This document shows positions 161 through 47,483 of a stretch of 64,000 nucleotides of DNA, in pieces. Position 1 is the first letter of the stretch. Each line of letters begins with the position of its first letter. The notes below the pieces were generated by a model, which saw nothing but the letters and a program-made list of their open reading frames with translations, had not been told where the DNA came from and searched no databases. The DNA lies in IMG/VR virus record IMGVR_UViG_3300009514_000001, positions 1-64,000 of that record. One strand, given 5' to 3'. The position numbers were made by a program, and so were the translations under genes.

Positions 161-1054
161 CTAGTGCTCTAGAATGAGTCTCATCTCCTCATCCGACAGG
201 CCTTGCTCAAGCTGACGAGCAACGTGGAGCACCATGCGCTCCATGATTTTCTGGGCGGCCTCGTCGGGTCCCTCGCCTTCGGCAGCTGTCAGTCCACGCA
301 CGAATTCCATCGCCGGACCCAGACCCGGGATGTCGGAGGTGGAGAAGGGGAGTTTGTCGGCCAGGCCACCGCCCGTGGCGAAGCTCTCTGCGGTCTCCCC
401 GTGAAGGAAGATGTCGTCGGCGACTCCACTGACCGCCTTGATGCCAATGTGAAGGCTCAGACTGTGGAGGAGTGCTTTGCTCGCTCCCCAGGCCGCACCG
501 CCACCCATCGCCCCCAGGACCGTCCCGGCGACATAGACGCCCGTCCCATACAGCGTCTTCATCTCGGCCTTGGTCGGCTTGCGCTTCTCCTTGAGGAGCT
601 TGGCGACGATGACCGGGGTGTCGACAACCACCGACTTGACCTCGCCCTTGGCCGATTTCCAGAGCTGAGAGGCAGCAGCCCCCGGGGCCTTCTTGATCCT
701 GGAGGCCGCACTCTTCATGGCCTTGCCGCGGAACGCCTTGTCGGTGACGAGATTCTGGACGTGCTCTGAGGCCCCCTTGAGCTTGACCTTCGCAGCGGGT
801 TTGAGGCCCTTCACGAAGGTGAGAATCCGAGACCCCAGGCCGCCTTTGCTCCCGCCACCGTCTCCGGTGTCCTTGGGGCCCCCTTCGAGGCGGGACTGCC
901 AGTCGGCCTTGCTCAGGGGCTTCTTGCCCTCGCGCTTCTTGCGCTTGACGTAATCCTGGTAGGAGGCCGCCTGGAACGCCCTAGACGCAACGCGCTGGGC
1001 GATGGCGACGCGCTGGGCCATCTCTTGGGCTTCTCTGGGGGTGATGGTCGACAT
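161..1054 (-). CDS. Hypothetical protein, possibly virion-associated (N-terminal AQRVA/IAQRVASR motif)
   Basis: 297-aa ORF with GGAGG RBS; shares the IAxRVA motif with several other ORFs in the window. Confidence 0.6.
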   Translation of the reverse strand: MSTITPREAQEMAQRVAIAQRVASRAFQAASYQDYVKRKKREGKKPLSKADWQSRLEGGPKDTGDGGGSKGGLGSRILTFVKGLKPAAKVKLKGASEHVQNLVTDKAFRGKAMKSAASRIKKAPGAAASQLWKSAKGEVKSVVVDTPVIVAKLLKEKRKPTKAEMKTLYGTGVYVAGTVLGAMGGGAAWGASKALLHSLSLHIGIKAVSGVADDIFLHGETAESFATGGGLADKLPFSTSDIPGLGPAMEFVRGLTAAEGEGPDEAAQKIMERMVLHVARQLEQGLSDEEMRLILEH

Positions 1055-1204
1055 CTTTTCCTCCTACACCAGAGGAGACTATCGAACCAATCTCCAAGAA
1101 CGACGAAAGGAGCCGCATCTTTCGATGCCGCTCCTTCTGCCTGAGCCTAGCGCTAGCTCCCGTTCGACCTACGCGCAGAGGTCGTCAACAAGAAAATGAA
1201 AGTG

Positions 1205-1233
1205 GGTCCATTTTAGTTTCTCCGGACGTATTA
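1205..1233 (+). promoter_or_regulatory. Putative phage promoter GGTCC-N18-GTATTA
   Basis: One of nine intergenic or gene-junction copies with exact 18-nt spacing; upstream of ORF 1291. Confidence 0.65.
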
Positions 1234-1290
1234 GGAGGGACATGGCCTCGACCCGTCGGAGGCCGTCAGAACCTGACTAAGGAACTAGCG

Positions 1291-3216
1291 ATGAGTGACG
1301 AAATTCTCCCAGATGTCATCCCGAACGTAGCTCACCTTCGTGATGACGATGATGGCGACAACCTTGCGGTTGGCCAGTGGTACTGGACTGTCGTCAAAGA
1401 CGAGAGGTGGTTGGGATGTTTGGTTCACATCGGTTCGAACTATGTCCAGGTTCAGCGCGTCGGCGTTGAACACTTCACGAGCGTTCGCATCCACCTGGAC
1501 GAGTTCCACAAGCACTGCGTGGAGCCCGAGAACGAGCCCAACGTCTACATCGGCCAGAAGGTCGAAGAGCACCGCCACCAGGTCCAGGGGCTGATGGGCC
1601 GCGTCAAGCAGCTTTGCGCCAAGTTCGGTCTCACCCCGGCTGGTGCACTCCCCGCCGAGTCCAGCCAGACATCGGGCGCACTCGTGGTGGCCCACGGTGT
1701 CTCCGACATCCAGAAGCATCGCTCCGACCTGGTCAAGGCCAAGGAGGAGACCCTCCCGAACCTGTTCAAGGAGATCGAAAAGCACCACCGCCAGATGGCG
1801 AACTGGATGAAGGCCGAACTCGCACCCCTCAAGGCGAACGAGAACGTTCTCAAGGCCCAGACACGTGGCCTGGAGGACCAGATTTTCACCGTCGACCTGT
1901 ACGCTGGCCTCTCGGAGGAGCTGGTCCTCCTCAGAGATGGCAAGCCGGCCCCGGACGAGGAGAAGATTCGCCTCTACCAGCGCCGCCACTACATGGACGA
2001 GGAGTGTCTACTCCAGTACGAGTCCGGGGGGATGGACTTCAGGGGCATCGGGTCCTTCGACCAGTGGCTCATGAAGGATGAGAACCGGGAGCGGATTCTC
2101 CCCAAGCCCCGGTGTATCGTGGCCTTCCGGGTGCGGCGCCACAATAAGGAGCGCGAGGTCCTGTCCCTGTCCGACTTGTCCCTGTCCGACTTCATCACCT
2201 TCCAAGGGTTCGATGAGGCGGACAAGTGGACGTTCCTCTACCTGCGCAACGGGGACCGGTACTTCAGACTCTCAACGACCATCGAGTTCGGTGAGCGCCT
2301 CTTCCCCGACATCGGGCGGTCCAAGCTCCTCGGCGGCGAGGAGCTGTACATCATGCCTGGGTGGACTCGCTCTAGCGAATGCCTCATCACCGAGCGTGAG
2401 CTGATTGCCAAGCGTGAGAAGGAGGCGAAGGAGAGGGCCAAGTACGAGGATAAGCTGGCTGCCTGGAAGAAGGCTGACCCGAAGGCTCGGGGCCTCCGCC
2501 CCCATCTCTGGTTGGGCTCCAGGCCTTCGTCCGAGAGGTACGAACCGCTCAACCAGGACAGCGTCTACTATGATGACGCGATGGCCGAGATTCACAAGGC
2601 CGCCCGGGACCATAATCGCGTCTCTGTCGTTCTCCAAGGTCTCCTTGACCGGTCGACCGCGTTCCAACCACATCCCCCCTGGCGCCTGTGGACAATCGAG
2701 GGGTTCCAGGGAGCTGTCGAGCTTATCTACAACGACTCTCGGGGTCTCGTTGCGGGCGAGAAGCCGGACTTCGAGGCTTTCCGGAAACGGCTCAACGCCA
2801 CACTCAAGAGAGGGTCGAAGACGGTCGGCCAGGAGTACTTCTGGCTGAGGCGGGAGGCGAAGAAGGAGAACGACCGAAGGGGCGACTCGTTTCCCTACAC
2901 CACGTTCCAACCCTATGGAAATCCTGGTCCTGGGGTCGTCGCCGAAGTCAGTGGGATGAGCAGGGACAAGACCAAGGTGAAGTTCACCTGGGAGCGGAAG
3001 AGGTTGAGCTACGGGTACGACCGTAGCCCCATACGCTGCCACCTCGAAGTCCCCATCGACCGCGTCCTGAATGTGGACGCCTACGAGCCGGGGTCTTACC
3101 AGCAATTCTACCGCGACCATAGAACACGCGCGGAGTACCTGAAGTGGGCTCCACTGCTGCTGGCCTGCGAGGACCACTACCAAGAAAAAGCGAAAAAAAG
3201 CGACATGCGTTCATAG
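1291..3216 (+). CDS. Large hypothetical protein (coiled-coil N-terminal half)
   Basis: 641-aa ORF with consistent GC3-rich codon usage; in-frame 15-bp duplication at 2162-2191. Confidence 0.75.
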   Translation: MSDEILPDVIPNVAHLRDDDDGDNLAVGQWYWTVVKDERWLGCLVHIGSNYVQVQRVGVEHFTSVRIHLDEFHKHCVEPENEPNVYIGQKVEEHRHQVQGLMGRVKQLCAKFGLTPAGALPAESSQTSGALVVAHGVSDIQKHRSDLVKAKEETLPNLFKEIEKHHRQMANWMKAELAPLKANENVLKAQTRGLEDQIFTVDLYAGLSEELVLLRDGKPAPDEEKIRLYQRRHYMDEECLLQYESGGMDFRGIGSFDQWLMKDENRERILPKPRCIVAFRVRRHNKEREVLSLSDLSLSDFITFQGFDEADKWTFLYLRNGDRYFRLSTTIEFGERLFPDIGRSKLLGGEELYIMPGWTRSSECLITERELIAKREKEAKERAKYEDKLAAWKKADPKARGLRPHLWLGSRPSSERYEPLNQDSVYYDDAMAEIHKAARDHNRVSVVLQGLLDRSTAFQPHPPWRLWTIEGFQGAVELIYNDSRGLVAGEKPDFEAFRKRLNATLKRGSKTVGQEYFWLRREAKKENDRRGDSFPYTTFQPYGNPGPGVVAEVSGMSRDKTKVKFTWERKRLSYGYDRSPIRCHLEVPIDRVLNVDAYEPGSYQQFYRDHRTRAEYLKWAPLLLACEDHYQEKAKKSDMRS

Positions 3217-3255
3217 TTGGCCTGGTGGGCGGGCTTACTGGAGTGAAGGGCGGCC
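3208..3255 (+). repeat. Conserved upstream element, copy 1 (CGTTCATAGTTGG..GGGCGGGCTTA.TG..TGAAGGG.CGGCC); copy 2 at 7877-7928
   Basis: Two near-identical ~48-nt intergenic blocks, each followed by an ACAACC(C)GAGAGG leader. Confidence 0.7.
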
Positions 3256-3287
3256 AAAGGGGCTGCTCACAACCGAGAGGCAACACC

Positions 3288-3765
3288 ATGACTAACTAAC
3301 GATACTCCCCTAGCAATCCAGTCCCTCCAGCGCGCGTACAACGGCTCCAACGAGGTCCGCTCCGAGCTAGTCATCCTCAACACCACCGGCGATGTCGACC
3401 CGCTCAACTACGGAGGGGGTGTCGTATTCGAGCGGTCCGAGACAGACACCGTCGAGTGGTGGTTCTGGTCCGGATGTGACGAGATGTACGGCGCCCCCGA
3501 CGACGAGCTGGACGCCAAGTTCAAGGTCTACCGACTCACCGTGCCGGACAACGTGCACGAGGAGTACGACTGGGCCGAGTGGAAGAGCATCAGCTCCTTC
3601 ACGGGCGCCGAGGACATCTGCAAGATGGCCGAGAGCAGTGACCTCCAGGAACGCCTCGTCGCTCTGGAGGCAGTCAAGAGCTACCACGGACCCGACGTCT
3701 TGGACTTCTACCCCGTCACGATGACCGGCCGCGAGCTGGCCCGGAAGTTCGGACTTGACAACTAA
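3288..3765 (+). pseudogene. Hypothetical gene broken at codon 4 by a 4-bp duplication (TAAC TAAC)
   Basis: ATG ACT AAC TAA after a strong GAGAGG leader; removing one TAAC joins the ATG to the long frame ending at 3765. Confidence 0.65.
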
Positions 3766-3819
3766 CCCACTGACGAGTGCTGCTGGGGAGCAGCCGAAAC
3801 GCCCCTCGGGGCGTCTGGG
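3766..3819 (+). ncRNA. Type I hammerhead ribozyme
   Basis: CCCA-CUGACGA-G(U)GCUGCU/AGCAGC C-GAAA-CGCCC/GGGCG-UC-UGGG: complete core, three stems, GUC cleavage triplet ending at 3815. Confidence 0.8.
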
Positions 3820-3841
3820 ACCCACTAACCACAGGAGAAGC

Positions 3842-4078
3842 ATGCTTGATAGTTCCACCCTGAACATCCTTCGTTCACAACATCCAGAGTTCACCTGGCA
3901 GGCCATCAAGGGAGCCGGCGTGATTGGCGCGAGAGGAACGAAGGACGAGGAGACCATCGAGGTCTTCTTCTGGGCCGACACCCACCAGTGGGTTGCCCAA
4001 CACAATGGCGGCAGCCTCACTCTGGGAAACCACTACACGGCCTGTCAGGCGGTCGATGAGACCCTCGCAACCGACTAG
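3842..4078 (+). CDS. Small hypothetical protein
   Basis: AGGAG RBS, ATG at 3842, directly downstream of the hammerhead. Confidence 0.55.
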   Translation: MLDSSTLNILRSQHPEFTWQAIKGAGVIGARGTKDEETIEVFFWADTHQWVAQHNGGSLTLGNHYTACQAVDETLATD

Positions 4079-4086
4079 GAGATGCA

Positions 4087-4608
4087 ATGAAATACGACGA
4101 ACGACACTACACCATGGCCCGCCAGGCGGCGGCTGTGGCTCACCAGGGGCAGACCTACGAGATTTTCCCCTACACCATGCACCTCGACCTCGTCGTCGAC
4201 GTCATCAAGCGACACGGCCTCTCCGGTCCGTTCATCGTCGCCGGGTACCTTCACGACGCGATGGAGGACGGGGCTCTGACCTACTCCAAAATCAAGCGCT
4301 ATTTCGGTGAGAAGGTCGCCGAGATGGTTCTCGCGGTCACTGACGAGATCGGACGCAACCGCAAGGAGAAGAAGACCCGAACCTTGGCCAAGATTGCCGG
4401 AAATGAGGACGCCACCATCCTCAAGTTGGCCGACCGCATCGCCAACGTGGAATTCGGCAAGGAGTTCGGGGGCAAGGTCGACATGTATCGCAAGGAGTAC
4501 AGGGCGTTCCGCCAGGCACTCTACAATCTCGACCACTCACGGGCTTGTCCCCTCTGGCGAGACCTGGACGTGTTGATGGGCTGGGTGGGTGAGGAAATCG
4601 ATGGCTAG
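4087..4608 (+). CDS. HD-domain protein of the RelA/SpoT hydrolase (small alarmone hydrolase/Mesh1-like) type
   Basis: AH.GQ....PY..H, LHDAMED (HDxxED) and KLADRIAN motifs. Confidence 0.85.
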   Translation: MKYDERHYTMARQAAAVAHQGQTYEIFPYTMHLDLVVDVIKRHGLSGPFIVAGYLHDAMEDGALTYSKIKRYFGEKVAEMVLAVTDEIGRNRKEKKTRTLAKIAGNEDATILKLADRIANVEFGKEFGGKVDMYRKEYRAFRQALYNLDHSRACPLWRDLDVLMGWVGEEIDG

Positions 4609-4846
4609 CTTTGATTTCCACACCCTCTACGTGGTCTGCTACCCCGGACCACACTGCCCCCAACCCTTCGACGAGAGGGTCTACACTGACCGCGTCGAGG
4701 CCGAGAAGGTGGCCGCCTACGCACGCAAAGCGAAGGGTCTTGGCGTTCGTCCATATAAGGACGCCAAGGTCCTGTCGCTCGGCGACTTCATCTCGGACGT
4801 CCGCACCGAGGCCCTCGACGCCACCCGAGGAGACCACTGCTGGTGA
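4601..4846 (+). CDS. Small hypothetical protein
   Basis: GAGG RBS; overlaps the stop of the previous gene. Confidence 0.5.
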   Translation: MASFDFHTLYVVCYPGPHCPQPFDERVYTDRVEAEKVAAYARKAKGLGVRPYKDAKVLSLGDFISDVRTEALDATRGDHCW

Positions 4847-5164
4847 CCCCCATGAAGATTCGACTGACCTGCCCTCGCCGACGGCGAGGTCTGTGCCGGG
4901 GCTCTCAACTGGGACGAGCCCCAGGAGAGGAAAGATGCTGAGCGAGCCGACGCCTGGATTACCCAAGCGGTCGAGAACCACATTAAGCGCTGCAGCGGAG
5001 CGTACTAGTCAAAGATCTAGGTGGGATGCCGGATCTCGGTGATCGCATCCTACCCGAAGTGTAATGCGCCCTGTGGAGGTGTGGATCGACGAAGAGGGTT
5101 ACTACAGACTATCAATCTACTCCAAGGACACTTCACCCGCGGGGCGTTACCCCGAGAGGACGAC

Positions 5165-5449
5165 ATGAGAGAAGACCTACAGCAGGCAGTTCGAGAGCTT
5201 CACGAAACGGACCCGCGCCGAGAGGCGTGGAACTTGTTCGAGGTGGTCGGCTCGAGCCAGAGACCCAACAAGTTCGAGATCGAAAAGGTCGACCTCCCAG
5301 AAGTCGAGTGCGAGGAGTTTGAGGCCGATGACGACGCGGCCACATACGTGGCCGAGCGCCTCATGGAGGTACACGGCGGGAACAGGTGGGCCGACCATCC
5401 CTCGTGCGCACAGTGTAGGTTGTGCCTCATCCGCGCACTCTACCCATGA
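5165..5449 (+). CDS. Hypothetical protein
   Basis: GAGGA RBS, ATG at 5165, phage-like codon usage. Confidence 0.5.
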   Translation: MREDLQQAVRELHETDPRREAWNLFEVVGSSQRPNKFEIEKVDLPEVECEEFEADDDAATYVAERLMEVHGGNRWADHPSCAQCRLCLIRALYP

Positions 5450-5827
5450 AGATCCACGGCGACCAGATCAGGTACTGGTCTGTGTTCGATCAAATGCCGG
5501 AGATACTTCGAGGACTTTTATTCTGGCGCGGATGCTGATGATTAGAGCTTTCTGAGCGTCCTGGTCGACGTATCCGAGATGGTCCGAGAGGCCGGAATCA
5601 CGTTCCCTACGGCCATGATGGCCCGAGAGGCCGGAATCACGTTCCCTACGGCCATCACACGCCGCCTGTAGGGACGAAAGGTAAACACGGCGAGGATCTG
5701 ACTGAAACCAACCAACCACTGGGGTGATGTCTTCTGGGGTGTCTGCAAGGGAGTGGGCCAGAACAAGCTGGGCCACATTTTGATGCAGGTGCGCCAGGAG
5801 CTACGCTCCCAACTCCAACAGGAGTGA
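5446..5827 (+). pseudogene. Decayed NADAR (YbiA-like) gene
   Basis: Fragments FLS..GITFPTA and ETN-HWGDVFWGVCKGVGQNKLGHILMQVRQEL in broken frames, with duplications at ~5584-5655 and ~5707. Confidence 0.7.
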
Positions 5828-5830
5828 CCC

Positions 5831-6433
5831 ATGTTCGCAATGTTCACAATGTACGACCCTCACGAGTTCGCCGAGGCCATCGAGGTCCCGGTGGAGGAGT
5901 GGCCAGGTCGGTGCTTCGAGATCGCCTGCCTCATCGTCAAACGTGCGTTGGTCGAGGGTACACCGGTCTATGGACACTGGCTCGGGCCGGTCCATCCGGA
6001 CAACGGCACGTTCGACCCCAAGCGTTCCTTCCAGCGTCATGGCTGGGTTGTGGATGACGACGGTGAGATCATCGACCCCACCCGGTGGGTGTTCGAGAAC
6101 CGCACCCCCTACATCTTCGCTGGCCCCAACGAAGATGGCTTCTACGACGAAGGGGGCAACAAGTTCAGGGACCTGTACCGGAGGCCCTGTCCGTCCCCGG
6201 ATGCTCACGACCAGTTCCCGGACTTCCAGGTCGTGGGTGAGGCCAGGGACTTCTGTATCGCCCAGATGGGCCCACCACCCTGGAACGTCCTCCAGGTGGG
6301 CTGGCTCGCCAACCTCAACCCCCAGCCCCTCGGCGACCTTGCCCCGGTCCTTCACCAGGCCATCAAGGACGCCGGGTGGTCTGGATTCATCCCCATCGAC
6401 AACCGTCTATGGGTCGAGCGCACCTTCGGGTGA
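5831..6433 (+). CDS. Hypothetical protein
   Basis: 200-aa ORF with good codon usage and GGAG RBS. Confidence 0.65.
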   Translation: MFAMFTMYDPHEFAEAIEVPVEEWPGRCFEIACLIVKRALVEGTPVYGHWLGPVHPDNGTFDPKRSFQRHGWVVDDDGEIIDPTRWVFENRTPYIFAGPNEDGFYDEGGNKFRDLYRRPCPSPDAHDQFPDFQVVGEARDFCIAQMGPPPWNVLQVGWLANLNPQPLGDLAPVLHQAIKDAGWSGFIPIDNRLWVERTFG

Positions 6434-6446
6434 GCTTGGAGGCCGT

Positions 6447-7034
6447 ATGACTGAAGAAGGCCATCCCAATTACCCCTTCAAGGCGGAGCCCGGGCGGGGG
6501 AATAGAAGTCACTGGAACCCCATCAGCTGTCGCTGTCGCTGAATACGTCTACGACTTCCTCATCGAAGAGGGAGAGCGTAGGTTGAAAGAGTACAGGGAA
6601 AACGGAGGGGTTGGCTGCTCTCCGACCTCGACACCTGGCACCAGTGCCGGGACCACTACGACGACCAGCCCCACCCCGAGATGGACATCTACTGTGACTG
6701 TGGGTGTGGCACCGAGGGCCTCTGCGAGGAGGAGGCCATTCGCTGGCAGGCCGAGGCCGCCGTCAGTCGGGTTCAGACACTGGCTGAGAAGCCGATGCTG
6801 CGAGAGGCCGTTCTAGTCACGCCTGAACTTGTCCGCCGGTTCGAAACCATCCAAGGCGGGCTCGGCTCTTTCGATGACTCCGAGGCCATCCTGGCCGCCG
6901 CCGAGCGTCGGGGAGTTTCGGTCGAGCAGAACGGCCGCGGCGAAAGAATCGGCCTCCGGCGCAGGTACGACGCCCTCGGCGACTACACGCCCGTGTTCAT
7001 GACTGACAAAGATGACGACGACATCCCCTTCTGA
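6447..7034 (+). pseudogene. Frameshifted hypothetical gene (CxC..C motif in the C-terminal frame)
   Basis: Coding-like sequence continues across three frames to the stop at 7034. Confidence 0.4.
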
Positions 7035-7047
7035 GAGGCAACACACC

Positions 7048-7344
7048 ATGGACACTCCCAAGCGCATCATCCTAGTCCACGACCTAAATCCTGACAGCCA
7101 GGGTCGGCAGTCCTTCACCATGCTTTGGCCGGACGACCGGCTGTTCCTCCTCGGCAAGGAGAAGGCGGAACAGATGAGAAAGAAGGGCCGCACCCAGTAC
7201 GTCCGCGGCCAAGGTTTCTTCGCCAAGGTCGAGGACCACACGAGACCTGGAGACCTCGTCCTCGACGACTTCAACAACACCCGCTTAGAGGAGGCCAAGG
7301 GTCTTCTCCTCCCGGAGAACCATCATGTCACTTCCACGGATTAA
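7048..7344 (+). CDS. Hypothetical protein
   Basis: Preceded by the GAGAGGCAACACACCATG leader. Confidence 0.6.
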   Translation: MDTPKRIILVHDLNPDSQGRQSFTMLWPDDRLFLLGKEKAEQMRKKGRTQYVRGQGFFAKVEDHTRPGDLVLDDFNNTRLEEAKGLLLPENHHVTSTD

Positions 7345-7873
7345 CGCTCACAGCGTCAAACGATGCGTAGGTGAGGTTATCAATTTCATTCTCGACCCGG
7401 ATTTCCCCTTCGAGTTCAACCCCGCCTACCAGCGAGGTGCCGTCTGGAGCGTCGAGCAGAAACGCAACCTCTGGAAGTCTCTCCTGATGGGGCTTCCGGT
7501 GGGGGCGGTGTTCATTAACCAACGGGGGGACCACTCCTTCGGAGCCGAGAAAACCTATCACGTCGTCGACGGCCAGCAGCGCCTGCGAGCCCTGCTGGAG
7601 TTCCGCCAAGGTCTCTACGGCCTCCCCCGCGACTGGTTCGAAGACGACTGGGTAGCTCCTGACTACGAGGGCGAGTTCGTCACCTTCGACGGCCTCTCTC
7701 GGAATGGTTGGTCCTGTATCCGCAAAGAGGCCACCATCATCTGGCTGGAGACCACCCTGAAGACCGAGGCCGAGGAGGCCGAGATGTACCTCCTTATCAA
7801 CTTCGGCGGAGTCGAGCAGACGGCGGAAGACCGCTCCAGGGCTGAGGATGTCGCTTTTTCACAAGAAAAGTGA
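7325..7873 (+). CDS. Stand-alone DUF262 (ParB-like, GmrS/SspE-type) domain protein
   Basis: PAYQRGAVW, LLMGLPVG and VVDGQQRL motifs. Confidence 0.8.
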   Translation: MSLPRINAHSVKRCVGEVINFILDPDFPFEFNPAYQRGAVWSVEQKRNLWKSLLMGLPVGAVFINQRGDHSFGAEKTYHVVDGQQRLRALLEFRQGLYGLPRDWFEDDWVAPDYEGEFVTFDGLSRNGWSCIRKEATIIWLETTLKTEAEEAEMYLLINFGGVEQTAEDRSRAEDVAFSQEK

Positions 7874-8064
7874 CCTCGTTTCATAGTTGGTCCTCTGGGC
7901 GGGCTTAGTGACATGAAGGGGGCGGCCCCCACAACCCGAGAGGAGACGAGATGTCCGCCAACTACTGGCAAAAAGGTCCATTCGGATACACCGCCACAAT
8001 CAGTGGAATCGCTGGTCGCTCTGTCGAGAGGGAGAGTTCCTCGAGACGGCCGATACCCTGAAGG

Positions 8065-8196
8065 TGACGATGGCCCGCGGCGGCGGGCCGAAACGCCCTC
8101 ACGGGCGTCTGGGACGCAAACACCCACCCATGACGATGGCCCGCGGCGGCGGGCCGAAACGCCCTCACGGGCGTCTGGGACGCAAACACCCACCCA
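8065..8196 (+). repeat. Perfect 66-bp tandem duplication containing a hammerhead-like fold
   Basis: 8065-8130 equals 8131-8196; contains UGACGA, the stem GGCCCGC/GCGGGCC, GAAAC, CGCCC/GGGCG and UCUGGG as at 3766. Confidence 0.8.
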
Positions 8197-8464
8197 CAAC
8201 CCGAGAGGCAACACCATGAGCTACGAGAAACGAGACGAGAGAATGGAAGCAGCCCTCAACCGCTTCCGCGCCAACACCCGACGACGCCGCCGCAACCGAC
8301 GCCGGGTCGAGGCCCGGGACCGCAAGGAAGAGCGCTTCCGCGACGTCGACCCGCACCTCGCCCCGAGCAGTATCGCCTGCACCGACGAGGTCTGACACCC
8401 TTCTCCTGTCCACTGGAATTCTAGTGGACAGGAGAACGCACCCAACACCCCGAGAGGCAACACC

Positions 8465-9065
8465 ATGTCAGCTACCGACACCCGACCCGTCGTCCTGTCC
8501 TACGGACTCGGCGCCGACTCCACCGCCATCCTGCTTCGCTGGCTCCTCGACCCGTCGAGCCGTAACTTTGACCTGTCCCAGCTCATCGTCGTCACGGCGA
8601 TGGTCGGCGACGAATTCGACGAGACCGGTCGTCTCGTCGAGGAGCACATCCTCCCCATCATCCGCGAGATCAACGAAGAGCTTCGCAAGCAAGGCCGGCA
8701 TCCGGGTAGCTCAGGTCGCCCGAGGCGGTCGCCTGGAGAAAGACGGCATCGTCGTCCTGGACGACTCCACCAACCCCGAGAAGCTCCACCTCAAGGGCGC
8801 CTACAAGCTCAGTGACGAGCTTCGCCACGCCCTCACCGTTCCCCAGTTCCGGGCCTACGCCCGCAAGTCCCACTCGGCCAGCGACGAGGACCGGCCCCAG
8901 GAGGACAGGAACGAGGCCCACGAGATGGCCAGGATGTTCGCCGCTCTCGAACACGAGGGCATCAAGCCCTGGGAGATTTCCTTTGGCTACCACGACTGTC
9001 CGGAGAGCGTCCTGGGGATTTGCTACCACCAGACCATCGCCAAGGAGTGGTGTGACGTGAGCTAA
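8465..9065 (+). pseudogene. PAPS-reductase-like (adenine nucleotide alpha-hydrolase) gene, frameshifted and truncated
   Basis: N-terminal VVLSYGLGADST PP-loop motif; frame change near 8695. Confidence 0.55.
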
Positions 9066-13614: not shown

Positions 13615-14658
13615 ATGAGAAAGCCCTCTGTCGACAAATTCCAAGGATGCCTCATTGGGTGCGCTGTCGGAGATGCCGTCGGCGCTCCCGCGGAAACCTG
13701 GGGACTGCGAGAGTGTCAGACCTACGTCAAGACCAAGGTCGGACCCATGGCCTTTGAGAGGGTGTTCCGGACGTCCAGAAAGGGCGAGCGAGTCCCCTTC
13801 GGACAGTACACCGACGACACCCAGCTCACCCGAGAGCTGATCTCGTCCATCCTCGACCGCGGCGAGGTCGACCCTGAGCACTACGCCGATATCCTCGTGG
13901 ACCTGTTCGGTAACCGCAACCCGGTCGGTACCGGACGAGCCACTAGAGCGGCCGTCACCCGCCTCTATCAGGGAGTCCCCTGGGACGAGGCAGGAACGCC
14001 CTCGCCATCCGCGGGCAACGGCTCGGCCATGAGGGCCGCCCCCGTCGGCCTGCTCCACTGGAACACCAGGCCGAAGCGTATCAAGAACCTGGTCGAGGAC
14101 GCCGAGGCCCAGGGCATCATCACGCATGCCAACCCCGTGTGTACCGCGGGGGCCGTTGCCCTCGCCACTGCCGTCAAACAGGCCCTCTCGCCCGCCCCTC
14201 CGAACACGCTACGCTGGTGGAAGGACCTGGCGGAGGGGGTGTCCTGCGTGGACCACAACGCCTACGACGACGTCCCGATGGACGAACTTATCCTGAGCCT
14301 GTGGAAGCGCCGTGAGGCCAAACCCGAGGACATCAGGACCTGGCTGATGGACATCACCCCAGACTTCGGCACCAAGTGGCGGGGTATCAGCTCCTGGGTT
14401 GTCTCCAGTGTCCTCTGGTCTCTGTACGCATTCCTCCGGACCCCGGACGACTTCTGGATGACCATCCAGACGGCTATCTGGCCGGGAGGAGACGTCGATT
14501 CGACCGCGGCCATGGCAGGGGCCATCAGCGGCGCCTACAACGGCCTGGGAGCCATTCCCGAGGACGTGGCCAGGCAGGTCAACGACGACGGCTCCCAGGG
14601 CTATGAGGAGCTGTGTGAGATGGCCAGCAAACTCCATCAACGAACAGTAGGAGGCTAG
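13615..14658 (+). CDS. ADP-ribosylglycohydrolase (ARH/DraG family)
   Basis: AVGDAVG, YTDDTQ, GNGSAMRAAPVG and GGDVDSTAAMAGAISGA motifs. Confidence 0.92.
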   Translation: MRKPSVDKFQGCLIGCAVGDAVGAPAETWGLRECQTYVKTKVGPMAFERVFRTSRKGERVPFGQYTDDTQLTRELISSILDRGEVDPEHYADILVDLFGNRNPVGTGRATRAAVTRLYQGVPWDEAGTPSPSAGNGSAMRAAPVGLLHWNTRPKRIKNLVEDAEAQGIITHANPVCTAGAVALATAVKQALSPAPPNTLRWWKDLAEGVSCVDHNAYDDVPMDELILSLWKRREAKPEDIRTWLMDITPDFGTKWRGISSWVVSSVLWSLYAFLRTPDDFWMTIQTAIWPGGDVDSTAAMAGAISGAYNGLGAIPEDVARQVNDDGSQGYEELCEMASKLHQRTVGG

Positions 14659-17287: not shown

Positions 17288-17644
17288 ATGGAGCTGAGGG
17301 AGTCCCCAATGGCCTGGAAAGTGGTTTACGATGGACGACGTGGGCAGAGTCTCCACCCGGTTGAGAAGCCGGCGCCCGAGTGCGTCTCGCCCCACTGTGA
17401 CTGCAAGACACAGTGGCCCAAGCCCTCTTGGGACAACCATCTGGGGTTTCGCTACGCCGATCACAGCAACCATTGGGAGGTCCGAGATGCCGCCCTAGCC
17501 CTGGACAACCGGGCTGAACGGGCGGTTCCATCCCTGTGGCTCGCCCACATGGAGGAGATCGGCCGCCCCGTGAGACAGGTCTCTTGGAGAGGGGCCCACG
17601 GCAAAATCCCGAAATTCTACAGAAGAAGAGGACAAGAGCAATGA
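17288..17644 (+). CDS. Hypothetical protein
   Basis: GAGG RBS; ATGA overlap with the ligase N-half. Confidence 0.55.
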   Translation: MELRESPMAWKVVYDGRRGQSLHPVEKPAPECVSPHCDCKTQWPKPSWDNHLGFRYADHSNHWEVRDAALALDNRAERAVPSLWLAHMEEIGRPVRQVSWRGAHGKIPKFYRRRGQEQ

Positions 17645-18756
17645 ACAAGAGCGCGCTCACCAGGAAGATTGAAGATGCCAGAAAGGCCTACTACGGACCT
17701 AACGCCCCTCTCATGACGGATGCCGAGTACGATGCTCTCGAAGACGAGCTTCGCCTCCTCGACCCCGAGCATTACCTGCTCATGACAACAGGGACTCCTC
17801 CTGGCGACAGCGGCTGGGAGAAGGTCTCCCACGGCATCCCGATGCGCTCACTCAACAAGGCCCAGGTCTTCGATGAGATGGGCACCTGGTTCAAGAGCCT
17901 GGGACAGGTCCCCTGCCCACCTCTGGAACCCTCTCTGGTATTGACCGAGAAGCTCGACGGGATCTCATGCTCCCTCCAGTACATCAAGGGCCGACTCGTC
18001 TCGGCCCTGACCCGAGGTGACGGTGCCGTGGGTGAGGATATCACCCGCAACGTCAGTCTGATGAAGGGCGTTCAACACCGGCTGCCGAAAGGACCCTATG
18101 AGAACTGGAGCGGCCACCTCCGAGGTGAGATCGTCTGTCGCCGGTCCGACTTCGAGAAGCACTTCAAGGGCTACTCGAATCCCCGGAACACGGCGAGCGG
18201 GACGGCCAAACGTGAGAGCGACCCGGAGCCCTGCAAACACCTGACGGTCATCGTCTACCAGATGGTTCCCGAGGGCGGCTACATGATTTCGAAGATGACG
18301 GAGCTGGAGACCATCCAGAGCCTCGGGTTCATCGCCCCCAACTACGTTGGCCTGAAGTTCGACCGCATCGAGTCCATCTACCGAGGGTACGTTGACGACC
18401 AACGGGAGCTGTTGGACTACGACATCGACGGCCTGGTCATCGAGGTCAACTCCCAGTCCTTCGCTGAGGACCTCGGCGAGCTGAACAAGAGACCCAAAGG
18501 TGCCGTCGCGTTCAAGTTCCCCCACGACTCCAAAGAGACTACCCTGGAGCGCGTCGAATGGCAGGTCGGCAACACCGGCCGCATCACGCCGGTGGCGGTG
18601 TTCAAGGCGGTCAACCTGGCCGGTGCCAACGTTACCCGGGCAAGTCTCCACAACGTGTCCTACGTCAAGTCACTCAATCTCCACGAGGGCGACAAGATTC
18701 TCGTCAGCCGACGAAATGACGTCATCCCGGCCGTAGAGTCCAACCTCTCAAGGTAA
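17641..18756 (+). CDS. ligA: NAD-dependent DNA ligase, N-terminal half (Ia + adenylation + OB domains)
   Basis: YY..D.EYD.L, EKLDG, RGDG..GEDIT, NPRN.ASG, DIDGLV, WQVG.TGRITPVA and RASLHN; stops right after VIPAV. Confidence 0.93.
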   Translation: MNKSALTRKIEDARKAYYGPNAPLMTDAEYDALEDELRLLDPEHYLLMTTGTPPGDSGWEKVSHGIPMRSLNKAQVFDEMGTWFKSLGQVPCPPLEPSLVLTEKLDGISCSLQYIKGRLVSALTRGDGAVGEDITRNVSLMKGVQHRLPKGPYENWSGHLRGEIVCRRSDFEKHFKGYSNPRNTASGTAKRESDPEPCKHLTVIVYQMVPEGGYMISKMTELETIQSLGFIAPNYVGLKFDRIESIYRGYVDDQRELLDYDIDGLVIEVNSQSFAEDLGELNKRPKGAVAFKFPHDSKETTLERVEWQVGNTGRITPVAVFKAVNLAGANVTRASLHNVSYVKSLNLHEGDKILVSRRNDVIPAVESNLSR

Positions 18757-26466: not shown

Positions 26467-26496
26467 GAGGGGACTCTGACCCAGGGTCCCCTCTCC
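26467..26496 (+). terminator. Hairpin after HU
   Basis: AGAGGGGAC...GTCCCCTCT inverted repeat. Confidence 0.5.
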
Positions 26497-26557
26497 TCGT
26501 TTCGAGGAGGTACCATGAGCCTCGTCAGCTCAAACCCCTACTCCTGAGGATACCAGC

Positions 26558-27688
26558 ATGATCATCGAGTATATCTGGATTGACGGAACCGGGCCAACGC
26601 CCCAGCTCCGAAGCAAGACCAAGGTCGACAACAACAACAAGTCCCGGCTGGTGACAGAAGCCGTCCAGGACGGATTGGTAGCCACCGACGACGACGACAA
26701 CATCCCAGAGAACCTGCGTGAGTGCTATCTCGGCCCTGTCTGGGGCGCCGACGGCAGTTCGACGAACCAGGCGGCAGGAAAGGACTCCGACATCATCCTC
26801 GTCCCTGTCTGCTCAGTACGGGACCCGTTCCGGGCCAACGCCTTCCTGAACCTTTGTGAGGTCCTCGACAGCAAGGGAGAGCCTCACTCAAGCAACACCC
26901 GGGCGAAATTCCGAAAAGTCCTCACCCCACGGAGGCACTTCCAGCCTTGGCTCGGCCTGGAGCAGGAGTACACCCTCCTGACGCTCTCTAACCACGTGTC
27001 CTTGGATGCCAAGGGCAACACGGCCTTCGTCCTGGACCCCCTCGGGTTTGTAGCTCAGAAGGGCTACCCCAGACCCCAGGGTCCCTACTATTGTGGGGTC
27101 GGAGCCAACAACATCTACGGCCGAGGGGTCTACGAGGAATTCCTCAAGGCCACCTCCCTCGCCGGCATTGCCATCACGGGGGCCAACTGGGAGGTCATGC
27201 CTGGACAGGCTGAGTTCCAGGTCTCTGCCCCGGAAGCTCTCCTGACCTGCGACCATCTCTGGCTCGCCAGGTGGATTATCCAGCGCGTCGCGGAGGACCA
27301 CAGGGCCGTCGTGTCCTTCGATCCCAAACCGGCCGATGGTGACTGGAACGGCGCCGGTATGCACGCCAACTTCTCCACCGGGGTGATGCGAAGCCGGGAT
27401 GGACTCGACGTCATCAAAGAGGCCTGTGACCAGCTCGAAGAGCACGTCCAAAAGCACCTAGACGCCTACGGCGAGGGCTACGAACGTCGCCTCACGGGCG
27501 ACCACGAGACGTGCTCCTTCCAAGAGTACCGGTGGGGCATCGCTGACCGGACGGCCAGCGTCCGCATCCCCCTCCAAGTCAAGGAGGATGGCAAGGGCTA
27601 CCTAGAGGACCGTCGGCCAAACGCCAACGCCGACCCGTACAACGTCGGCCGGGTCCTCGTCGACACCATCTGTCGTCGGTTCACCTAG
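26558..27688 (+). CDS. glnII: Glutamine synthetase type II
   Basis: EYIWIDG, DGSST, EQEY, PQGPYYCGVG, EVMPGQ.EFQ, DWNGAGMH.NFST, LTG.HET and GYLEDRRP. Confidence 0.95.
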   Translation: MIIEYIWIDGTGPTPQLRSKTKVDNNNKSRLVTEAVQDGLVATDDDDNIPENLRECYLGPVWGADGSSTNQAAGKDSDIILVPVCSVRDPFRANAFLNLCEVLDSKGEPHSSNTRAKFRKVLTPRRHFQPWLGLEQEYTLLTLSNHVSLDAKGNTAFVLDPLGFVAQKGYPRPQGPYYCGVGANNIYGRGVYEEFLKATSLAGIAITGANWEVMPGQAEFQVSAPEALLTCDHLWLARWIIQRVAEDHRAVVSFDPKPADGDWNGAGMHANFSTGVMRSRDGLDVIKEACDQLEEHVQKHLDAYGEGYERRLTGDHETCSFQEYRWGIADRTASVRIPLQVKEDGKGYLEDRRPNANADPYNVGRVLVDTICRRFT

Positions 27689-31082: not shown

Positions 31083-32346
31083 ATGTCTGTCGTCCAAAGG
31101 GCATACAAGGTTGAGATCGACCCCAATAACAAGCAACGCACCGCTCTGCGGTGCCGCTCTGCGGTGCCACGCTGGTTGTGCCAGGTGGGCATTCAATTGG
31201 GGACTCTCCCGTAAAATCGAGTCCTACAAGGAGACGAGGAAGTCCCCGAACAACATCGAGCTTCATCGGGAGTTGAATAAGCTCAAGAGGGCCGACCCAG
31301 AGAACGGTGGAATTCCCTGGATGTACAACGTCTCGAAGTGCGCACCACAGGAAGCTCTCCGAGACCTGGATAAAGCGTTCAAGAGCTTCTTCAGACGCTG
31401 TAAGAAGGGGGCCAAGAGAAAAGGTTTCCCTCGGTTTAAATCTCGTCGGAAGAGTCCCCTCAAATTTCGCCTCACAGGGGCTATCAGGACTTCCGAAGAC
31501 GGCAAACAGATCAAACTCCCCAACTTGGGGTGGATCCGGCTCAAAGAGACCGGGTACCTCCCAGGACCCGAGAGGAAAGAAGTGAAAATCCAGTCGGCAT
31601 CACTCTCTGAGCGAGCCGGAAGGTGGTTCGTTTCTCTGACCTGTAAAGTAGAGGTTCCTGATACCGCACCACGACCGAGAACCAAAGTCGTTGGGGTGGA
31701 TGTTGGAATCAAATCTCTTGCGGTGACGAGCGACGGACAGGTGTTCGAGAATCCGAAAGCCCTGGCTCGTGTGCAACGCCGCTTGCGGCGAGCACAAAAG
31801 GCACTGGCTAGGAAACAGAAGGGCAGTAGGAATCGGGAGAAGGCACGTAGGAGAGTTGCGAAGCTCTACTATCGGGTGTCGTGCATCCGACAAGATGCTC
31901 TACACAAAGCCACCAGTGAGATCGTGAAGGGCGCAGATGTAGTCTGCATCGAGTCCCTGAACGTCTCTGGGATGTTGAAGAACAGGAAACTCTCTCGTGC
32001 TCTTTCTGACGCATCCCTGTCGGAGTTCTTGCGTCAGTTGGCCTACAAGGCTGAGTGGGCCGGTGTTGAGGTGGTAGAGGCCGACAGGTTCTACCCATCG
32101 AGCAAGACCTGTTCTGGGTGTGGTCACGTCAAACAGGACTTGTCTTTGTCTGATCGTACCTACTCTTGTGGGGAGTGTGGTTTGGTGATGGACCGAGACC
32201 TGAATGCCGCAATCAATTTGAAAAACTTGGCCCCGAGTTCCGGGGTGTCAGCCTGTGGAGAGAATGTAAGACCCCAGTCGGAGCTTGCTCGGGTTGGGGC
32301 TATCTCTGCGAAACAGGAACCGAACACAGGAGCTACACCATGTTAG
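31083..32346 (+). pseudogene. tnpB: TnpB RNA-guided nuclease, frameshifted by a 13-bp duplication at 31141-31166
   Basis: GVDVG, CIESL and DRDLNAA RuvC residues and the Zn ribbon are intact; removing one CCGCTCTGCGGTG restores MSVVQRAYKVEIDPNNKQRTALRCHAGCARWAFNW. Confidence 0.88.
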
Positions 32347-33225: not shown

Positions 33226-33265
33226 CAGGGTGGAAGCAAACCACCCTTGTCGAGAGGACAAACCG

Positions 33266-40079: not shown

Positions 40080-40754
40080 ATGAACCTGAGAAAACTACTC
40101 AGCGACCCTGTGAGGGTCAAGGTCACAGGCAGAAGAGGCCTCTTTTCGCGCCATGACTTTCCTACGGAGAGGATTTCATACCCTATCATGACCCCCAGTG
40201 CCGCCCGGGGGCTGCTCAGAAGGATATACGGAAAACCTCAGCATTTCTGGGTGATACAGGCGGTTCAGGTGCTGAATCCAATTCGGTTCGAGAACATCAC
40301 CTACAACGAGGTGAGACTCCCGAAGAGACCTGTTCCTGTGAATGTTAGCAATACATCTCAGGTCCGTATTCAGAGGTCTGCCCAGGTTCTCATAGAGCCC
40401 TCCTACATCATCGAGGCACGGGTTCTGGTGCATCCCTATGCGTACAGGAACGGAGGCATGCCCACCAAGCACACGGAACAGCTCAAGAGACGTCTGAAGA
40501 GGGGCCAGTTCTTCCTCCAACCCGATCTCGGCAAGAGCGAGTTTTTCGCTGATTGTTCTTTGCCGGACGGCAGCGAGAGTCCCCTTCCAGTGAGCCAGGA
40601 CCTCGGCCGTATCCCTCTCTTCGTCGATCAGAGCGAAGGGCGCTCGCACTACTTCCAGGCCTTCATGAAGCGGGGTGTGGTGCAGGTGCCGCAGAAGCAG
40701 CTTCTGGACGTCCTGGAGCCGAAACTCCTCGACCAAGACCCTTGGAGAACGTGA
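40080..40754 (+). CDS. cas5: Type I-C Cas5 (Cas5d, crRNA-processing)
   Basis: ERISYPIMTPSAARG.L..IYGKP..W.I..V.VLNPIRF..I..NEV; TKH..Q..RR..RGQ.F.QP.LG..EF. Confidence 0.92.
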   Translation: MNLRKLLSDPVRVKVTGRRGLFSRHDFPTERISYPIMTPSAARGLLRRIYGKPQHFWVIQAVQVLNPIRFENITYNEVRLPKRPVPVNVSNTSQVRIQRSAQVLIEPSYIIEARVLVHPYAYRNGGMPTKHTEQLKRRLKRGQFFLQPDLGKSEFFADCSLPDGSESPLPVSQDLGRIPLFVDQSEGRSHYFQAFMKRGVVQVPQKQLLDVLEPKLLDQDPWRT

Positions 40755-47290: not shown

Positions 47291-47483
47291 TGTCAGAGAC
47301 CATCGAAACCGGAACCGTCTTCACCCCCGGCAGCTCCAGCAACCTAGCCTTCGGAAACGGTCAGTGCATCTGCTCGGCCGGAGGATATCGGAACCGCTAA
47401 ACCAGTTCCAACTCTACTCTAGGACCCTTGGGAAACCGTTTTACCGGTCCCTGAGCGTCTGTTTTCTGATCTCAGGAGACTCC

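What the first reader, a model, noticed from the sequence alone, without database searches (positions are those of the whole stretch)
3766..3819. Canonical type I hammerhead ribozyme between two phage genes
Seen: stem I CCCA(3766-69)/UGGG(3816-19); core CUGACGA (3770-76); stem II GCUGCU/AGCAGC closed by G-C; GAAA (3796-99); stem III CGCCC/GGGCG; cleavage triplet GUC ending at 3815. It starts immediately after the TAA of the upstream frame and about 25 nt before the next RBS. Established: this is the hammerhead consensus. Inference: self-cleavage cuts the polycistronic early mRNA, leaving a 5'-OH transcript for the downstream genes, including the alarmone hydrolase.
Basis: partly seen in the sequence, partly recalled or inferred. 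Interest (0 to 1): 0.68.

Follow-up and report, generated by a model that had tools for sequence, protein, structure and literature searches.

The report
Type I hammerhead ribozyme between phage genes
A 54-base stretch between two genes of a 222-kb uncultured phage has every defining sequence feature of a self-cutting hammerhead RNA; it belongs to a large, already described kind of phage ribozyme, so it is real but ordinary.

Summary
Window 3766-3819 (+) carries the full hammerhead core (CUGACGA, GAA, A15.1-U16.1, C17 = C3815). Three helices surround it in type I topology. The element starts directly after a TAA stop and ends 22 nt before the next ATG.

- **Not chance.** A generic hammerhead descriptor hits once in the window, against 1 hit in 300 dinucleotide shuffles.
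- **Family membership.** A covariance model built only from relatives in other viral contigs scores it 58.5 bits (E about 6e-17).
- **Covariation.** 110 distinct relatives show 93.5% pairing and compensatory changes in 14 of 16 pairs, with an invariant core. They also show a pseudoknot between loop II and the 3' tail, which this copy can form.
- **Rfam.** Rfam's curated models miss this copy and all its type I relatives. That is a coverage gap in the models, not a refutation.
- **Function.** Cleavage after C3815 would split a multi-gene transcript, as Perreault et al. (2011) proposed for phage hammerheads. Cleavage itself is untested here, because no RNA runs were listed.
- **Decayed copies.** A perfect 66-nt tandem at 8065-8196 carries two more copies that lack C3. 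They are probably inactive.

Verdict: new member of a known kind; modest interest.

The parts
3301..3765 (+). Upstream gene (open frame from 3292; TAA at 3763-3765 abuts stem I). Start codon unclear.
   Evidence: GC3 0.8-0.97 in this frame; 157 open codons upstream of the stop; no Pfam, PHROG or NCBIfam hit.
3766..3769 (+). Stem I, 5' strand (CCCA)
   Evidence: pairs with 3816-3819. Stem I columns covary in the family.
3770..3776 (+). Catalytic core C3-A9 (CUGACGA)
   Evidence: In 110 distinct relatives: C3 108, U4 109, G5, A6, G8 and A9 all 110.
3777..3795 (+). Stem II hairpin: G3777-C3795, bulged U3778, 6 bp 3779-3784/3789-3794, loop GGGG 3785-3788
   Evidence: An extra nucleotide at this place is present in 36 of 110 relatives. 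Stem II covaries.
3796..3798 (+). Core G12 A13 A14
   Evidence: invariant in 110 of 110 relatives.
3799..3814 (+). Stem III hairpin (A15.1-U16.1 plus 5 G-C pairs, loop CUCG)
   Evidence: A-U invariant in 110 of 110; the inner pairs covary.
3815..3815 (+). C17: predicted cleavage 3' of this base. The upstream RNA would end in a 2',3'-cyclic phosphate and the downstream RNA would start with 5'-OH U3816.
   Evidence: Position follows from hammerhead numbering. C in 109 of 110 relatives. The cleavage chemistry is established knowledge of the class and was not tested here.
3816..3819 (+). Stem I, 3' strand (UGGG)
3821..3824 (+). Predicted pseudoknot partner (CCCA) of loop II (U3784 GGG 3785-3787)
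   Evidence: pairing between loop II and the tail is enriched over mismatched partners across the family. For this copy it is only 3-4 bp.
3833..3837 (+). Shine-Dalgarno AGGAG of the downstream gene
   Evidence: The same ACAGGAG context follows relatives in L045.
3842..4078 (+). Downstream gene, 78 aa, no family match
   Evidence: GC3 about 0.8.
4087..4608 (+). HD-domain phosphohydrolase resembling the RelA/SpoT hydrolase domain (putative small alarmone hydrolase)
   Evidence: PF13328 HD_4, E 6e-11; phrog_990, E 3.5e-28; TIGR00691 N-terminal part, E 5.5e-13.
8065..8130 (+). Hammerhead-like copy 2: no C3 and no stem I 5' strand; starts 3 nt after the TGA of a possible 36-codon ORF
   Evidence: (46.2 bits, local match).
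8131..8196 (+). Hammerhead-like copy 3: stem I CCCA/UGGG present, C3 missing. It is the second unit of a perfect 66-nt tandem.
   Evidence: (55.3 bits, C3 column deleted). The two window copies are the only 2 of 110 sequences lacking C3.

Best explanation
Window 3766-3819 encodes an intact type I hammerhead self-cleaving ribozyme, transcribed as part of a + strand multi-gene mRNA. Once 3766 to about 3824 has been transcribed, stems I-III form. Loop II (UGGG) probably pairs with CCCA 3821-3824 to hold stems I and II parallel. The 2'-OH of C3815 then attacks its 3' phosphate. This leaves the upstream gene's RNA ending in two stable hairpins and a 2',3'-cyclic phosphate. It also leaves a new downstream mRNA with a 5'-OH at U3816, 17 nt ahead of the ribosome-binding site of the 78-aa gene and the HD hydrolase gene behind it. 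The two halves of the transcript can then have separate stabilities and separate translation. Shown here: the sequence features, family membership, covariation and the intercistronic position. Inferred: the cleavage itself, the pseudoknot in this particular copy, and the consequence for gene expression.
For: - All core positions and the three helices are present.
- A generic descriptor gives 1 hit against 0.003 expected per shuffled window.
- Covariance model R1, built from 32 relatives in other IMG/VR contigs with the window left out, scores this site 58.5 bits, E 5.7e-17.
- Across 51 distinct relatives, 92.7% of cells pair (shuffles 74%, slid controls 35-46%) and 13 of 16 pairs show compensatory change.
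- Across 110 distinct relatives, 93.5% of cells pair (shuffles 70.7%, slid controls 17-44%) and 14 of 16 pairs show compensatory change.
- The core columns are essentially invariant.
- Loop II to tail complementarity exceeds every mismatched-partner control: 3.90 against 3.35 +/- 0.11, 0 of 2000, and 3.57 against 3.29 +/- 0.075, 0 of 1000.
- The hammerhead fold lies 0.5 to 2.9 kcal/mol above the MFE, without counting tertiary energy.
- In most relatives for which flanking ORFs could be called, the element starts within 0-6 nt of a stop codon and ends mostly 16-44 nt before a start codon with an RBS. This copy does the same.
- Clusters of the same element between small genes occur in other phage contigs: 14 in 7.4 kb of G002, 6 in G004, 5 in G003.
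- Published precedent: tandem hammerhead arrangements from three bacterial genomes (Clostridium scindens, Azorhizobium caulinodans, Agrobacterium tumefaciens) were tested in vitro, and the A. tumefaciens ribozymes also self-cleaved when expressed in E. coli. The same paper shows that the pseudoknot is needed at physiological Mg2+ (PMC3088659).
Against: - No Rfam family reaches its gathering score. The best sub-threshold matches are RAGATH-1-hammerhead at 19.2 bits (cut-off 56.3) and Hammerhead_II at 15.6 bits.
- Stem I is only 4 bp and the pseudoknot only 3-4 bp, one pair of which costs the closing U-A pair of stem II.
- A bulged U sits next to the G10.1-C11.1 pair.
- RNAfold's MFE for the longer context is not the hammerhead fold.
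- The same genome holds two decayed copies, so decay does happen here.
- No RNA data exist to show cleavage.
- No orthologous locus in a related phage keeps the element.
- R1's seed sequences were fished with a pattern taken from this element, so agreement in the fixed parts is partly by construction. The stems, the additional copies found by the model, and the generic descriptor are independent of that pattern.
Confidence: 0.85

Rival explanations
1. The element is a hammerhead by descent but no longer cleaves at a useful rate. It would persist only as a pair of stable intergenic hairpins, for example protecting the upstream mRNA's 3' end or pausing or terminating transcription.
For: Short 4-bp stem I, weak 3-4 bp pseudoknot, U3778 bulge next to the core. 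Two clearly decayed copies in the same genome. Not conserved next to the homologous HD gene in two other viral contigs: the 5.5-kb loci of both, and the whole 353-kb record of one.
Against: Every catalytic nucleotide is intact, whereas the decayed copies have lost C3. An extra nucleotide at the same stem II position is found in 36 of 110 relatives, so it is a family trait rather than damage. It is the second-best scoring hit among 131. No T-run follows either hairpin, so it is not an intrinsic terminator.
Confidence: 0.1
2. The hammerhead is primarily the boundary of a mobile or exchangeable gene cassette. Near-identical ribozyme copies between small genes would act as recombination points that shuffle genes among unrelated phages, with RNA cleavage secondary.
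For: The same ribozyme family occurs in many viral contigs whose hammerhead regions range from 45 to 78% G+C, often as arrays between small ORFs. A family copy was found in none of the 5.5-kb HD-relative loci and nowhere in the 353-kb record G001. Both hammerhead loci in this genome follow a motif of about 75 nt that is found nowhere else in the genome.
Against: The core is invariant and the stems covary, which is selection on RNA structure and catalysis rather than on DNA identity. No recombinase, target-site duplication or cassette ends were identified. The ACCCACU repeat flanking this copy is explained by both sites being complementary to other parts of the RNA.
Confidence: 0.04
3. Chance resemblance to the hammerhead consensus in a G+C-rich intergenic hairpin pair.
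For: Rfam curated models do not call it. Core-only patterns occur at chance frequency.
Against: Descriptor shuffles give 0.003 expected per window. The independent family model gives E about 6e-17. The family context is shared.
Confidence: 0.01

Closest known systems
Type I hammerhead ribozymes of bacteria and prophages (Perreault et al. 2011, PLoS Comput Biol, PMC3088659)
   Same: Same core, same open-stem-I topology, and a stabilising pseudoknot between stems I and II. They lie in intergenic regions of phage or prophage gene blocks, often several flanking single genes. The proposed role is processing long phage transcripts into gene-length mRNAs.
   Different: This copy is from an uncultured 222-kb phage and is the only intact one in its genome. 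Whether this exact subfamily (stem I CCCA/UGGG, core CUGACGA, often an extra nucleotide after A9) was in that paper's alignments was not checked.
Rfam RF03152 RAGATH-1 hammerhead
   Same: Best Rfam alignment. It shares the 5-bp stem I, the CUGANGAG and CGAAAC core segments, stem III and the GUC site, all in the same type I order.
   Different: Only model positions 21-77 align, so the 5' part of the model is absent. The score is 19.2 bits against a cut-off of 56.3. It is not a member.
Rfam RF02276 type II hammerheads of phages
   Same: Same core, and a very similar GAAAC / G+C-rich stem III / GUC segment. They are found in the same kind of phage contigs: L027 and L016 score 38-59 bits.
   Different: The topology is circularly permuted. 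In the window the type II reading needs CACUAAC to stand in for CUGAUGA, which fails (15 bits).
Rfam RF00163 Hammerhead_1 (type I model)
   Same: Nominally the same class and topology.
   Different: It gave no reported match even at E up to 10. One lower-scoring match from the same clan was suppressed. None of the type I relatives in 8 contigs reached any hammerhead gathering score.
HHphage of haloviruses HF1/HF2 (described in PMC3088659)
   Same: A hammerhead just upstream (13 nt) of a start codon in a phage polycistronic unit. A mapped 5' end lies within 3 nt of the cleavage site.
   Different: That one is a core variant described in the paper's section on variants from high-salt environments. 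This one has the standard core.

Membership tests
Hammerhead ribozyme, type I | Core strand C3 U4 G5 A6 N7 G8 A9 | tested here: met
   CUGACGA at 3770-3776.
Hammerhead ribozyme, type I | Core G12 A13 A14, the A15.1-U16.1 pair, and H17 (not G) at the cleavage site | tested here: met
   GAA at 3796-3798, A3799-U3814, C3815. These columns are invariant in 109-110 of 110 relatives.
Hammerhead ribozyme, type I | Three helices flush to the core (pairs 1.1-2.1 and 10.1-11.1), supported by covariation | tested here: met
   U3816-A3769 and G3777-C3795 pair. In the family, 14 of 16 pairs show compensatory changes and 93.5% of cells pair, against 17-44% in slid controls. That alignment was fitted to the model, which favours the structure.
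Hammerhead ribozyme, type I | Type I permutation: stem I open, stems II and III closed by loops | tested here: met
   Order along the strand: stem I 5' strand, core, hairpin II, GAAA, hairpin III, C17, stem I 3' strand.
Hammerhead ribozyme, type I | [quoted passage not shown] | tested here: inconclusive
   The family-level pseudoknot signal is significant. In this copy only 3-4 bp are possible (3784/5-3787 with 3821-3824).
Hammerhead ribozyme, type I | Score at or above the curated Rfam gathering threshold | tested here: not met
   0 hits at gathering. Best sub-threshold scores are 19.2 and 15.6 bits. The same models miss all type I relatives tested, so this measures model coverage and is not a defining biological feature.
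Hammerhead ribozyme, type I | Site-specific self-cleavage giving 2',3'-cyclic phosphate and 5'-OH ends | not testable with these tools
   No sequencing run was listed for this genome. No bench assay was possible.
Hammerhead ribozyme (copies at 8065-8130 and 8131-8196) | C3 present, to pair with G8 | tested here: not met
   G or A precedes UGACGA, and the model deletes the C3 column. These are the only 2 of 110 sequences without C3. There are 0 IMG/VR contigs with the C3-less form, against 76 with C3 for the same stem I.
RAGATH-1 hammerhead (RF03152) | Full-length match including the 5' extension (model positions 1-20), at or above 56.3 bits | tested here: not met
   Positions 21-77 only; 19.2 bits.
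Type II hammerhead (RF02276) | CUGANGA lying 3' of a closed stem I, with stem II open | tested here: not met
   The downstream segment is CACUAAC, not the core. 15.2-15.6 bits against a cut-off of 37.

The most novel reading that the evidence does not exclude
The ribozyme is gated by translation. In this copy and in most relatives the stop codon of the upstream gene abuts stem I (0-6 nt). A terminating ribosome's footprint would therefore cover the stem I 5' strand and the CUGANGA core. Cleavage could then happen only when the upstream gene is not being translated, or only after ribosome release. That would link the fate of the downstream mRNA to translation of the upstream gene. A second open possibility: in some subfamilies the 3' product refolds its first bases into a 5'-terminal hairpin (weak signal), which would fix the outcome of cleavage.
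Probability: 0.15. Interest if true: 0.6.

Novelty: new member of a known kind. Interest (0 to 1): 0.3.

Why it matters
For this genome, the finding marks a probable RNA processing site. That site would separate the first gene of a small + strand block from a 78-aa gene and a putative (p)ppGpp-type hydrolase, which matters for annotation and for any expression study.

More generally, the work shows that a very common phage subfamily of type I hammerheads is invisible to Rfam's curated thresholds. With only two narrow search patterns it turned up in more than 120 IMG/VR contigs and 6 MAG contigs. Routine Rfam-based annotation of phage genomes will therefore undercount ribozymes. The biology is not new: hammerheads flanking genes in phage and prophage DNA, their pseudoknot, and the transcript-processing idea were all published in 2011.

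Tried and rejected
- **Rfam.** At gathering thresholds over the whole window: nothing. In E-value mode, only sub-threshold hits.
- **Known phages.** Megablast of 3300-4300 against 50,697 GenBank phage records: no match.
- **Sequencing runs.** None was listed for 2000-9000, so read laying was not used and cleavage could not be observed.
- **Orthologous loci.** The upstream gene has no relatives in IMG/VR. Two loci with a 58%-identical HD protein hold no hammerhead, nor does the whole 353-kb record of one of them.
- **Near-identical copies.** Exact copies of stem II with its flanks from copy 1 or copies 2/3 in IMG/VR: none. Copy-1-like patterns in JGI metagenomes: none.
- **C3-less form.** As a recurrent variant in IMG/VR: none. 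The 'new core variant' idea for copies 2/3 was therefore dropped.
- **Other loose core matches.** The remaining hits, such as 26478-26528 on the minus strand and 47453-47493 on the minus strand, fail both the descriptor and the family model.
- **Minus-strand ORF 3367-4020.** It overlaps the element but was rejected as spurious, because GC3 supports the + strand frames.
- **Target-site duplication.** The direct repeat ACCCACU (3765-3771 and 3820-3826) was considered as one. It was rejected in favour of RNA pairing: the first copy is stem I plus the start of the core, and the second is the pseudoknot partner.
- **Upstream motif of about 75 nt.** No Rfam match, no copy in IMG/VR or in the fetched loci. 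With two sequences only, the fold is uninformative.
- **tblastx.** The comparison of the window with the fetched loci printed nothing. That program is not on the listed tool path, so the blank is not used as evidence.

Full report
**1. What is in the sequence**

- The upstream frame ends with TAA at 3763-3765.
- CCCA 3766-3769 pairs with UGGG 3816-3819 (stem I, 4 bp).
- CUGACGA 3770-3776 is the C3-A9 core strand.
- G3777-C3795 closes stem II. It is followed by a bulged U3778 and six pairs (3779-3784 with 3789-3794) around a GGGG loop.
- GAA 3796-3798 is G12-A14.
- A3799-U3814 and five G-C pairs form stem III.
- C3815 is position 17, the cleavage site.

The order of parts is type I: stem I is open, and stems II and III are capped by loops. 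The next Shine-Dalgarno sequence (AGGAG 3833-3837) lies 13 nt after the element and the ATG (3842) 22 nt after it. Third-position G+C supports coding on the + strand in 3301-3765, 3842-4078 and 4087-4608. The element thus fills most of a 76-nt intergenic gap.

**2. Is it more than chance?**

A pattern holding only the core strands is not enriched: 16 matches against 13 expected. A generic type I descriptor is far more selective. It requires the core, GAAA and UH, with each helix at least 4 bp and flush to the core, and it allows one extra nucleotide at the base of stem II. It finds exactly this one site on both strands of the window. In 300 dinucleotide-preserving shuffles it finds one site in total. 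The hammerhead secondary structure is energetically competitive. It scores -24.5 against an MFE of -25.0 kcal/mol for the 54-mer, and stays within 3 kcal/mol in longer contexts, before any tertiary energy is counted.

**3. Rfam**

No family reaches its gathering score anywhere in the 64 kb. With relaxed thresholds the best alignments are RAGATH-1-hammerhead and Hammerhead_II.

- RAGATH-1-hammerhead scores 19.2 bits against a cut-off of 56.3. Only model positions 21-77 align, but they align in the correct type I register.
- Hammerhead_II scores about 15 bits and needs a non-core heptamer downstream.

However, on ten related contigs the same library recovers type II hammerheads and twister ribozymes, and misses every type I relative. 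The blank is therefore a limit of the curated models.

**4. Relatives and a purpose-built model**

A pattern taken from the element retrieved 56 IMG/VR contigs. A few of these are type II hammerheads that matched by accident, and they were set aside.

- Thirty-two distinct type I sequences were aligned (A1). They were turned into covariance model R1 with the hammerhead structure, and no window sequence was included.
- R1 scores the finding 58.5 bits, E 5.7e-17. In the whole 222-kb genome it finds only two other strong sites, at 8123-8198 (55.3 bits) and 8065-8109 (46.2 bits).
- Searching the fetched loci with R1 found additional copies whose stem III differs from the fishing pattern.
- A second pattern fixed only stem I and the core. 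It retrieved 76 viral contigs and 6 MAG contigs: Burkholderiales, Gemmataceae, Planctomycetaceae, Alphaproteobacteria, Roseimaritima and one unclassified. R1 finds 131 hits in these.

Covariation is strong in both sets.

| Set | Distinct sequences | Cells paired | Shuffled mean | Slid controls | Pairs with compensatory change |
|---|---|---|---|---|---|
| A2 | 51 | 92.7% | 74.3% | 35-46% | 13 of 16 |
| A4 | 110 | 93.5% | 70.7% | 17-44% | 14 of 16 |

These alignments were fitted to the model, which favours the structure. Parts of each sequence were also fixed by the search patterns. The helices left free in each set nevertheless covary. Core columns are essentially invariant.

**5. Tertiary contact**

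Perreault et al. (2011) showed that about 40% of hammerheads use a pseudoknot between stems I and II, and that it is needed for fast cleavage at 0.5 mM Mg2+ (PMC3088659).

In this family loop II is complementary to the few bases that follow stem I, and the pairing covaries. Examples are CGGUU with AACCG, GUGGU with ACCAC, GAUGAU with AUCAUU, UGGC with GCCA and UUGAC with GUCAA.

The longest helix between each loop and its own tail exceeds every control in which loops and tails are re-paired between sequences:

- 3.90 against 3.35 +/- 0.11, 0 of 2000;
- 3.57 against 3.29 +/- 0.075, 0 of 1000.

In the window the possible pairing is UGGG 3784-3787 with CCCA 3821-3824. That is short, and it borrows the closing U of stem II. 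This pairing also explains the direct repeat ACCCACU at 3765-3771 and 3820-3826.

**6. Genomic context**

In most relatives for which flanking ORFs could be called, the element begins within 0-6 nt of the stop codon of an upstream ORF. It ends mostly 16-44 nt before a start codon with an AGGAG-type ribosome-binding site. The window copy follows this rule.

Other phage contigs carry arrays of the element on one strand, between small genes:

- 14 copies within 7.4 kb of the 43.9-kb record behind L045;
- 6 in a 146-kb record;
- 5 in a 62-kb record.

This is the arrangement described in 2011 for prophages, where long phage transcripts were proposed to be processed into single-gene or operon-length mRNAs.

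In the present genome no homologous locus keeps the element. The upstream gene has no relatives. Two loci with a 58%-identical HD protein lack it, and so does the whole 353-kb record behind one of them.

The downstream genes are a 78-aa ORF with no family match and a 173-aa HD_4 protein matching the hydrolase end of RelA/SpoT. 'Alarmone hydrolase' is therefore a fair but unproven label.

Nothing supports 'early'. The record's terminal repeat is 96 bp, which looks like an assembly overlap.

**7. Mechanism**

The best-supported reading is co-transcriptional self-cleavage after C3815.

- The upstream product would end in two G+C-rich hairpins and a 2',3'-cyclic phosphate.
- The downstream product would start with a 5'-OH 17 nt before its ribosome-binding site.

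Whether that raises or lowers downstream expression cannot be told. From general knowledge (not tested here), 5'-OH ends escape 5'-monophosphate-stimulated RNase E attack. They are, however, good substrates for RNase J1, as shown for the glmS ribozyme product.

The stop codon touches stem I, so a terminating ribosome would cover the stem I 5' strand and the core. This raises the untested possibility that cleavage is gated by translation of the upstream gene.

**8. The two other copies**

Window 8065-8196 is a perfect two-unit tandem of 66 nt. Each unit holds UGACGA, a 7-bp stem II, GAAA, stem III and GUC followed by UGGG.

The base before U4 is G in the first unit and A in the second. The model deletes the C3 column, and the first unit also lacks a stem I partner.

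Close relatives with the same loop and tail type, in L076, L077, L081 and L084, all have C3. The two window copies are the only ones among 110 sequences without it. The C3-less form with this stem I occurs in no IMG/VR contig, against 76 contigs with C3.

C3 pairs with G8 and natural variation there is compensated (U3 with A8). These copies are therefore most likely inactive remnants, unless the assembly is wrong at that base.

**9. Comparison and verdict**

The element meets every sequence-level defining feature of a type I hammerhead. It fails only the Rfam score criterion, for reasons of model coverage. It is not a RAGATH-1 member and not a type II member. Cleavage remains to be shown.

It is a new member of a known kind. 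The useful by-products are evidence that this phage subfamily is large and unannotated by Rfam, and the observations listed under Noticed in passing.

Noticed in passing
window 8065-8196: A perfect 66-nt tandem duplication carries two hammerhead-like units that lack C3. The first unit also lacks the stem I 5' strand. They lie in a 342-nt gap between the GmrSD_N-domain gene (7325-7873) and a 59-aa ORF (8216-8395).
   Followed up: yes
window 3190-3262 and 7855-7925: A conserved motif of about 75 nt (shared blocks TTCATAGTTGG, GGGCGGGCTTA, TGAAGGG) occurs exactly twice in the 222-kb genome. Each time it sits upstream of a short gene that is followed by a hammerhead. It has no Rfam match and no copy in IMG/VR or in the fetched loci. 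It may be a promoter or leader specific to these two units.
   Followed up: partly
window 3288-3305: An ATG with a good ribosome-binding site (GAGAGG) is followed by ACT AAC TAA. The strongly coding frame continues from 3301 in the +1 frame. The sequence ACTAACTAAC looks like a 4-nt duplication, so the upstream gene has either a frameshifted start, an unusual start codon, or an assembly error.
   Followed up: no
window 40553-42655: A 700-aa ORF matches Cas8c/Csd1 (Pfam E 3e-38; TIGR01863 E 4.5e-26, below its cut-off). This suggests a phage-borne type I-C CRISPR-Cas module. Neighbouring genes were not examined.
   Followed up: no
window 31111-32346: A TnpB / IS605 OrfB-type gene (OrfB_IS605, Cas12f1-like TNB, HTH) sits in the only low-G+C dip of the window (0.53 at 30-32 kb). 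It is probably a recently inserted IS element.
   Followed up: no
window 13615-14658, 33230-35011, 17536-18756, 26558-27688: The window encodes an ADP-ribosylglycohydrolase (E 8e-62), a protein with a PARP catalytic domain, an NAD-dependent DNA ligase, and a glutamine-synthetase-like protein. Together these form an NAD/ADP-ribose-related gene set in a jumbo phage.
   Followed up: no
relatives, e.g. L004:3888-3967, L013:2689-2768, L005:3766-3848: In subfamilies whose stem I is GCGGG, GUGGG or ACGGG, the 3' strand of stem I can also pair with a downstream repeat of the 5' strand (for example GCGG-GAAA-CCGC). This would give a 5'-terminal hairpin in the cleaved 3' product. Enrichment over mismatched controls is small (3.45 against 3.19 +/- 0.05) and is absent for the UGGG class that includes the window copy.
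   Followed up: partly
L045 / G002 (IMGVR_UViG_3300031999_000054) 411-7423; L027: One 43.9-kb viral contig holds 14 type I hammerheads in 7.4 kb between small ORFs. Another contig (L027) alternates type II hammerheads with twister-P5 ribozymes at intervals of roughly 0.4-1.2 kb.
   Followed up: partly
L139, L140, L143 (MAG contigs): Three of the six bacterial MAG contigs carrying the CCCA/UGGG subfamily are from Planctomycetota (Gemmataceae, Planctomycetaceae, Roseimaritima). This is a weak hint about hosts of phages carrying the subfamily.
   Followed up: no
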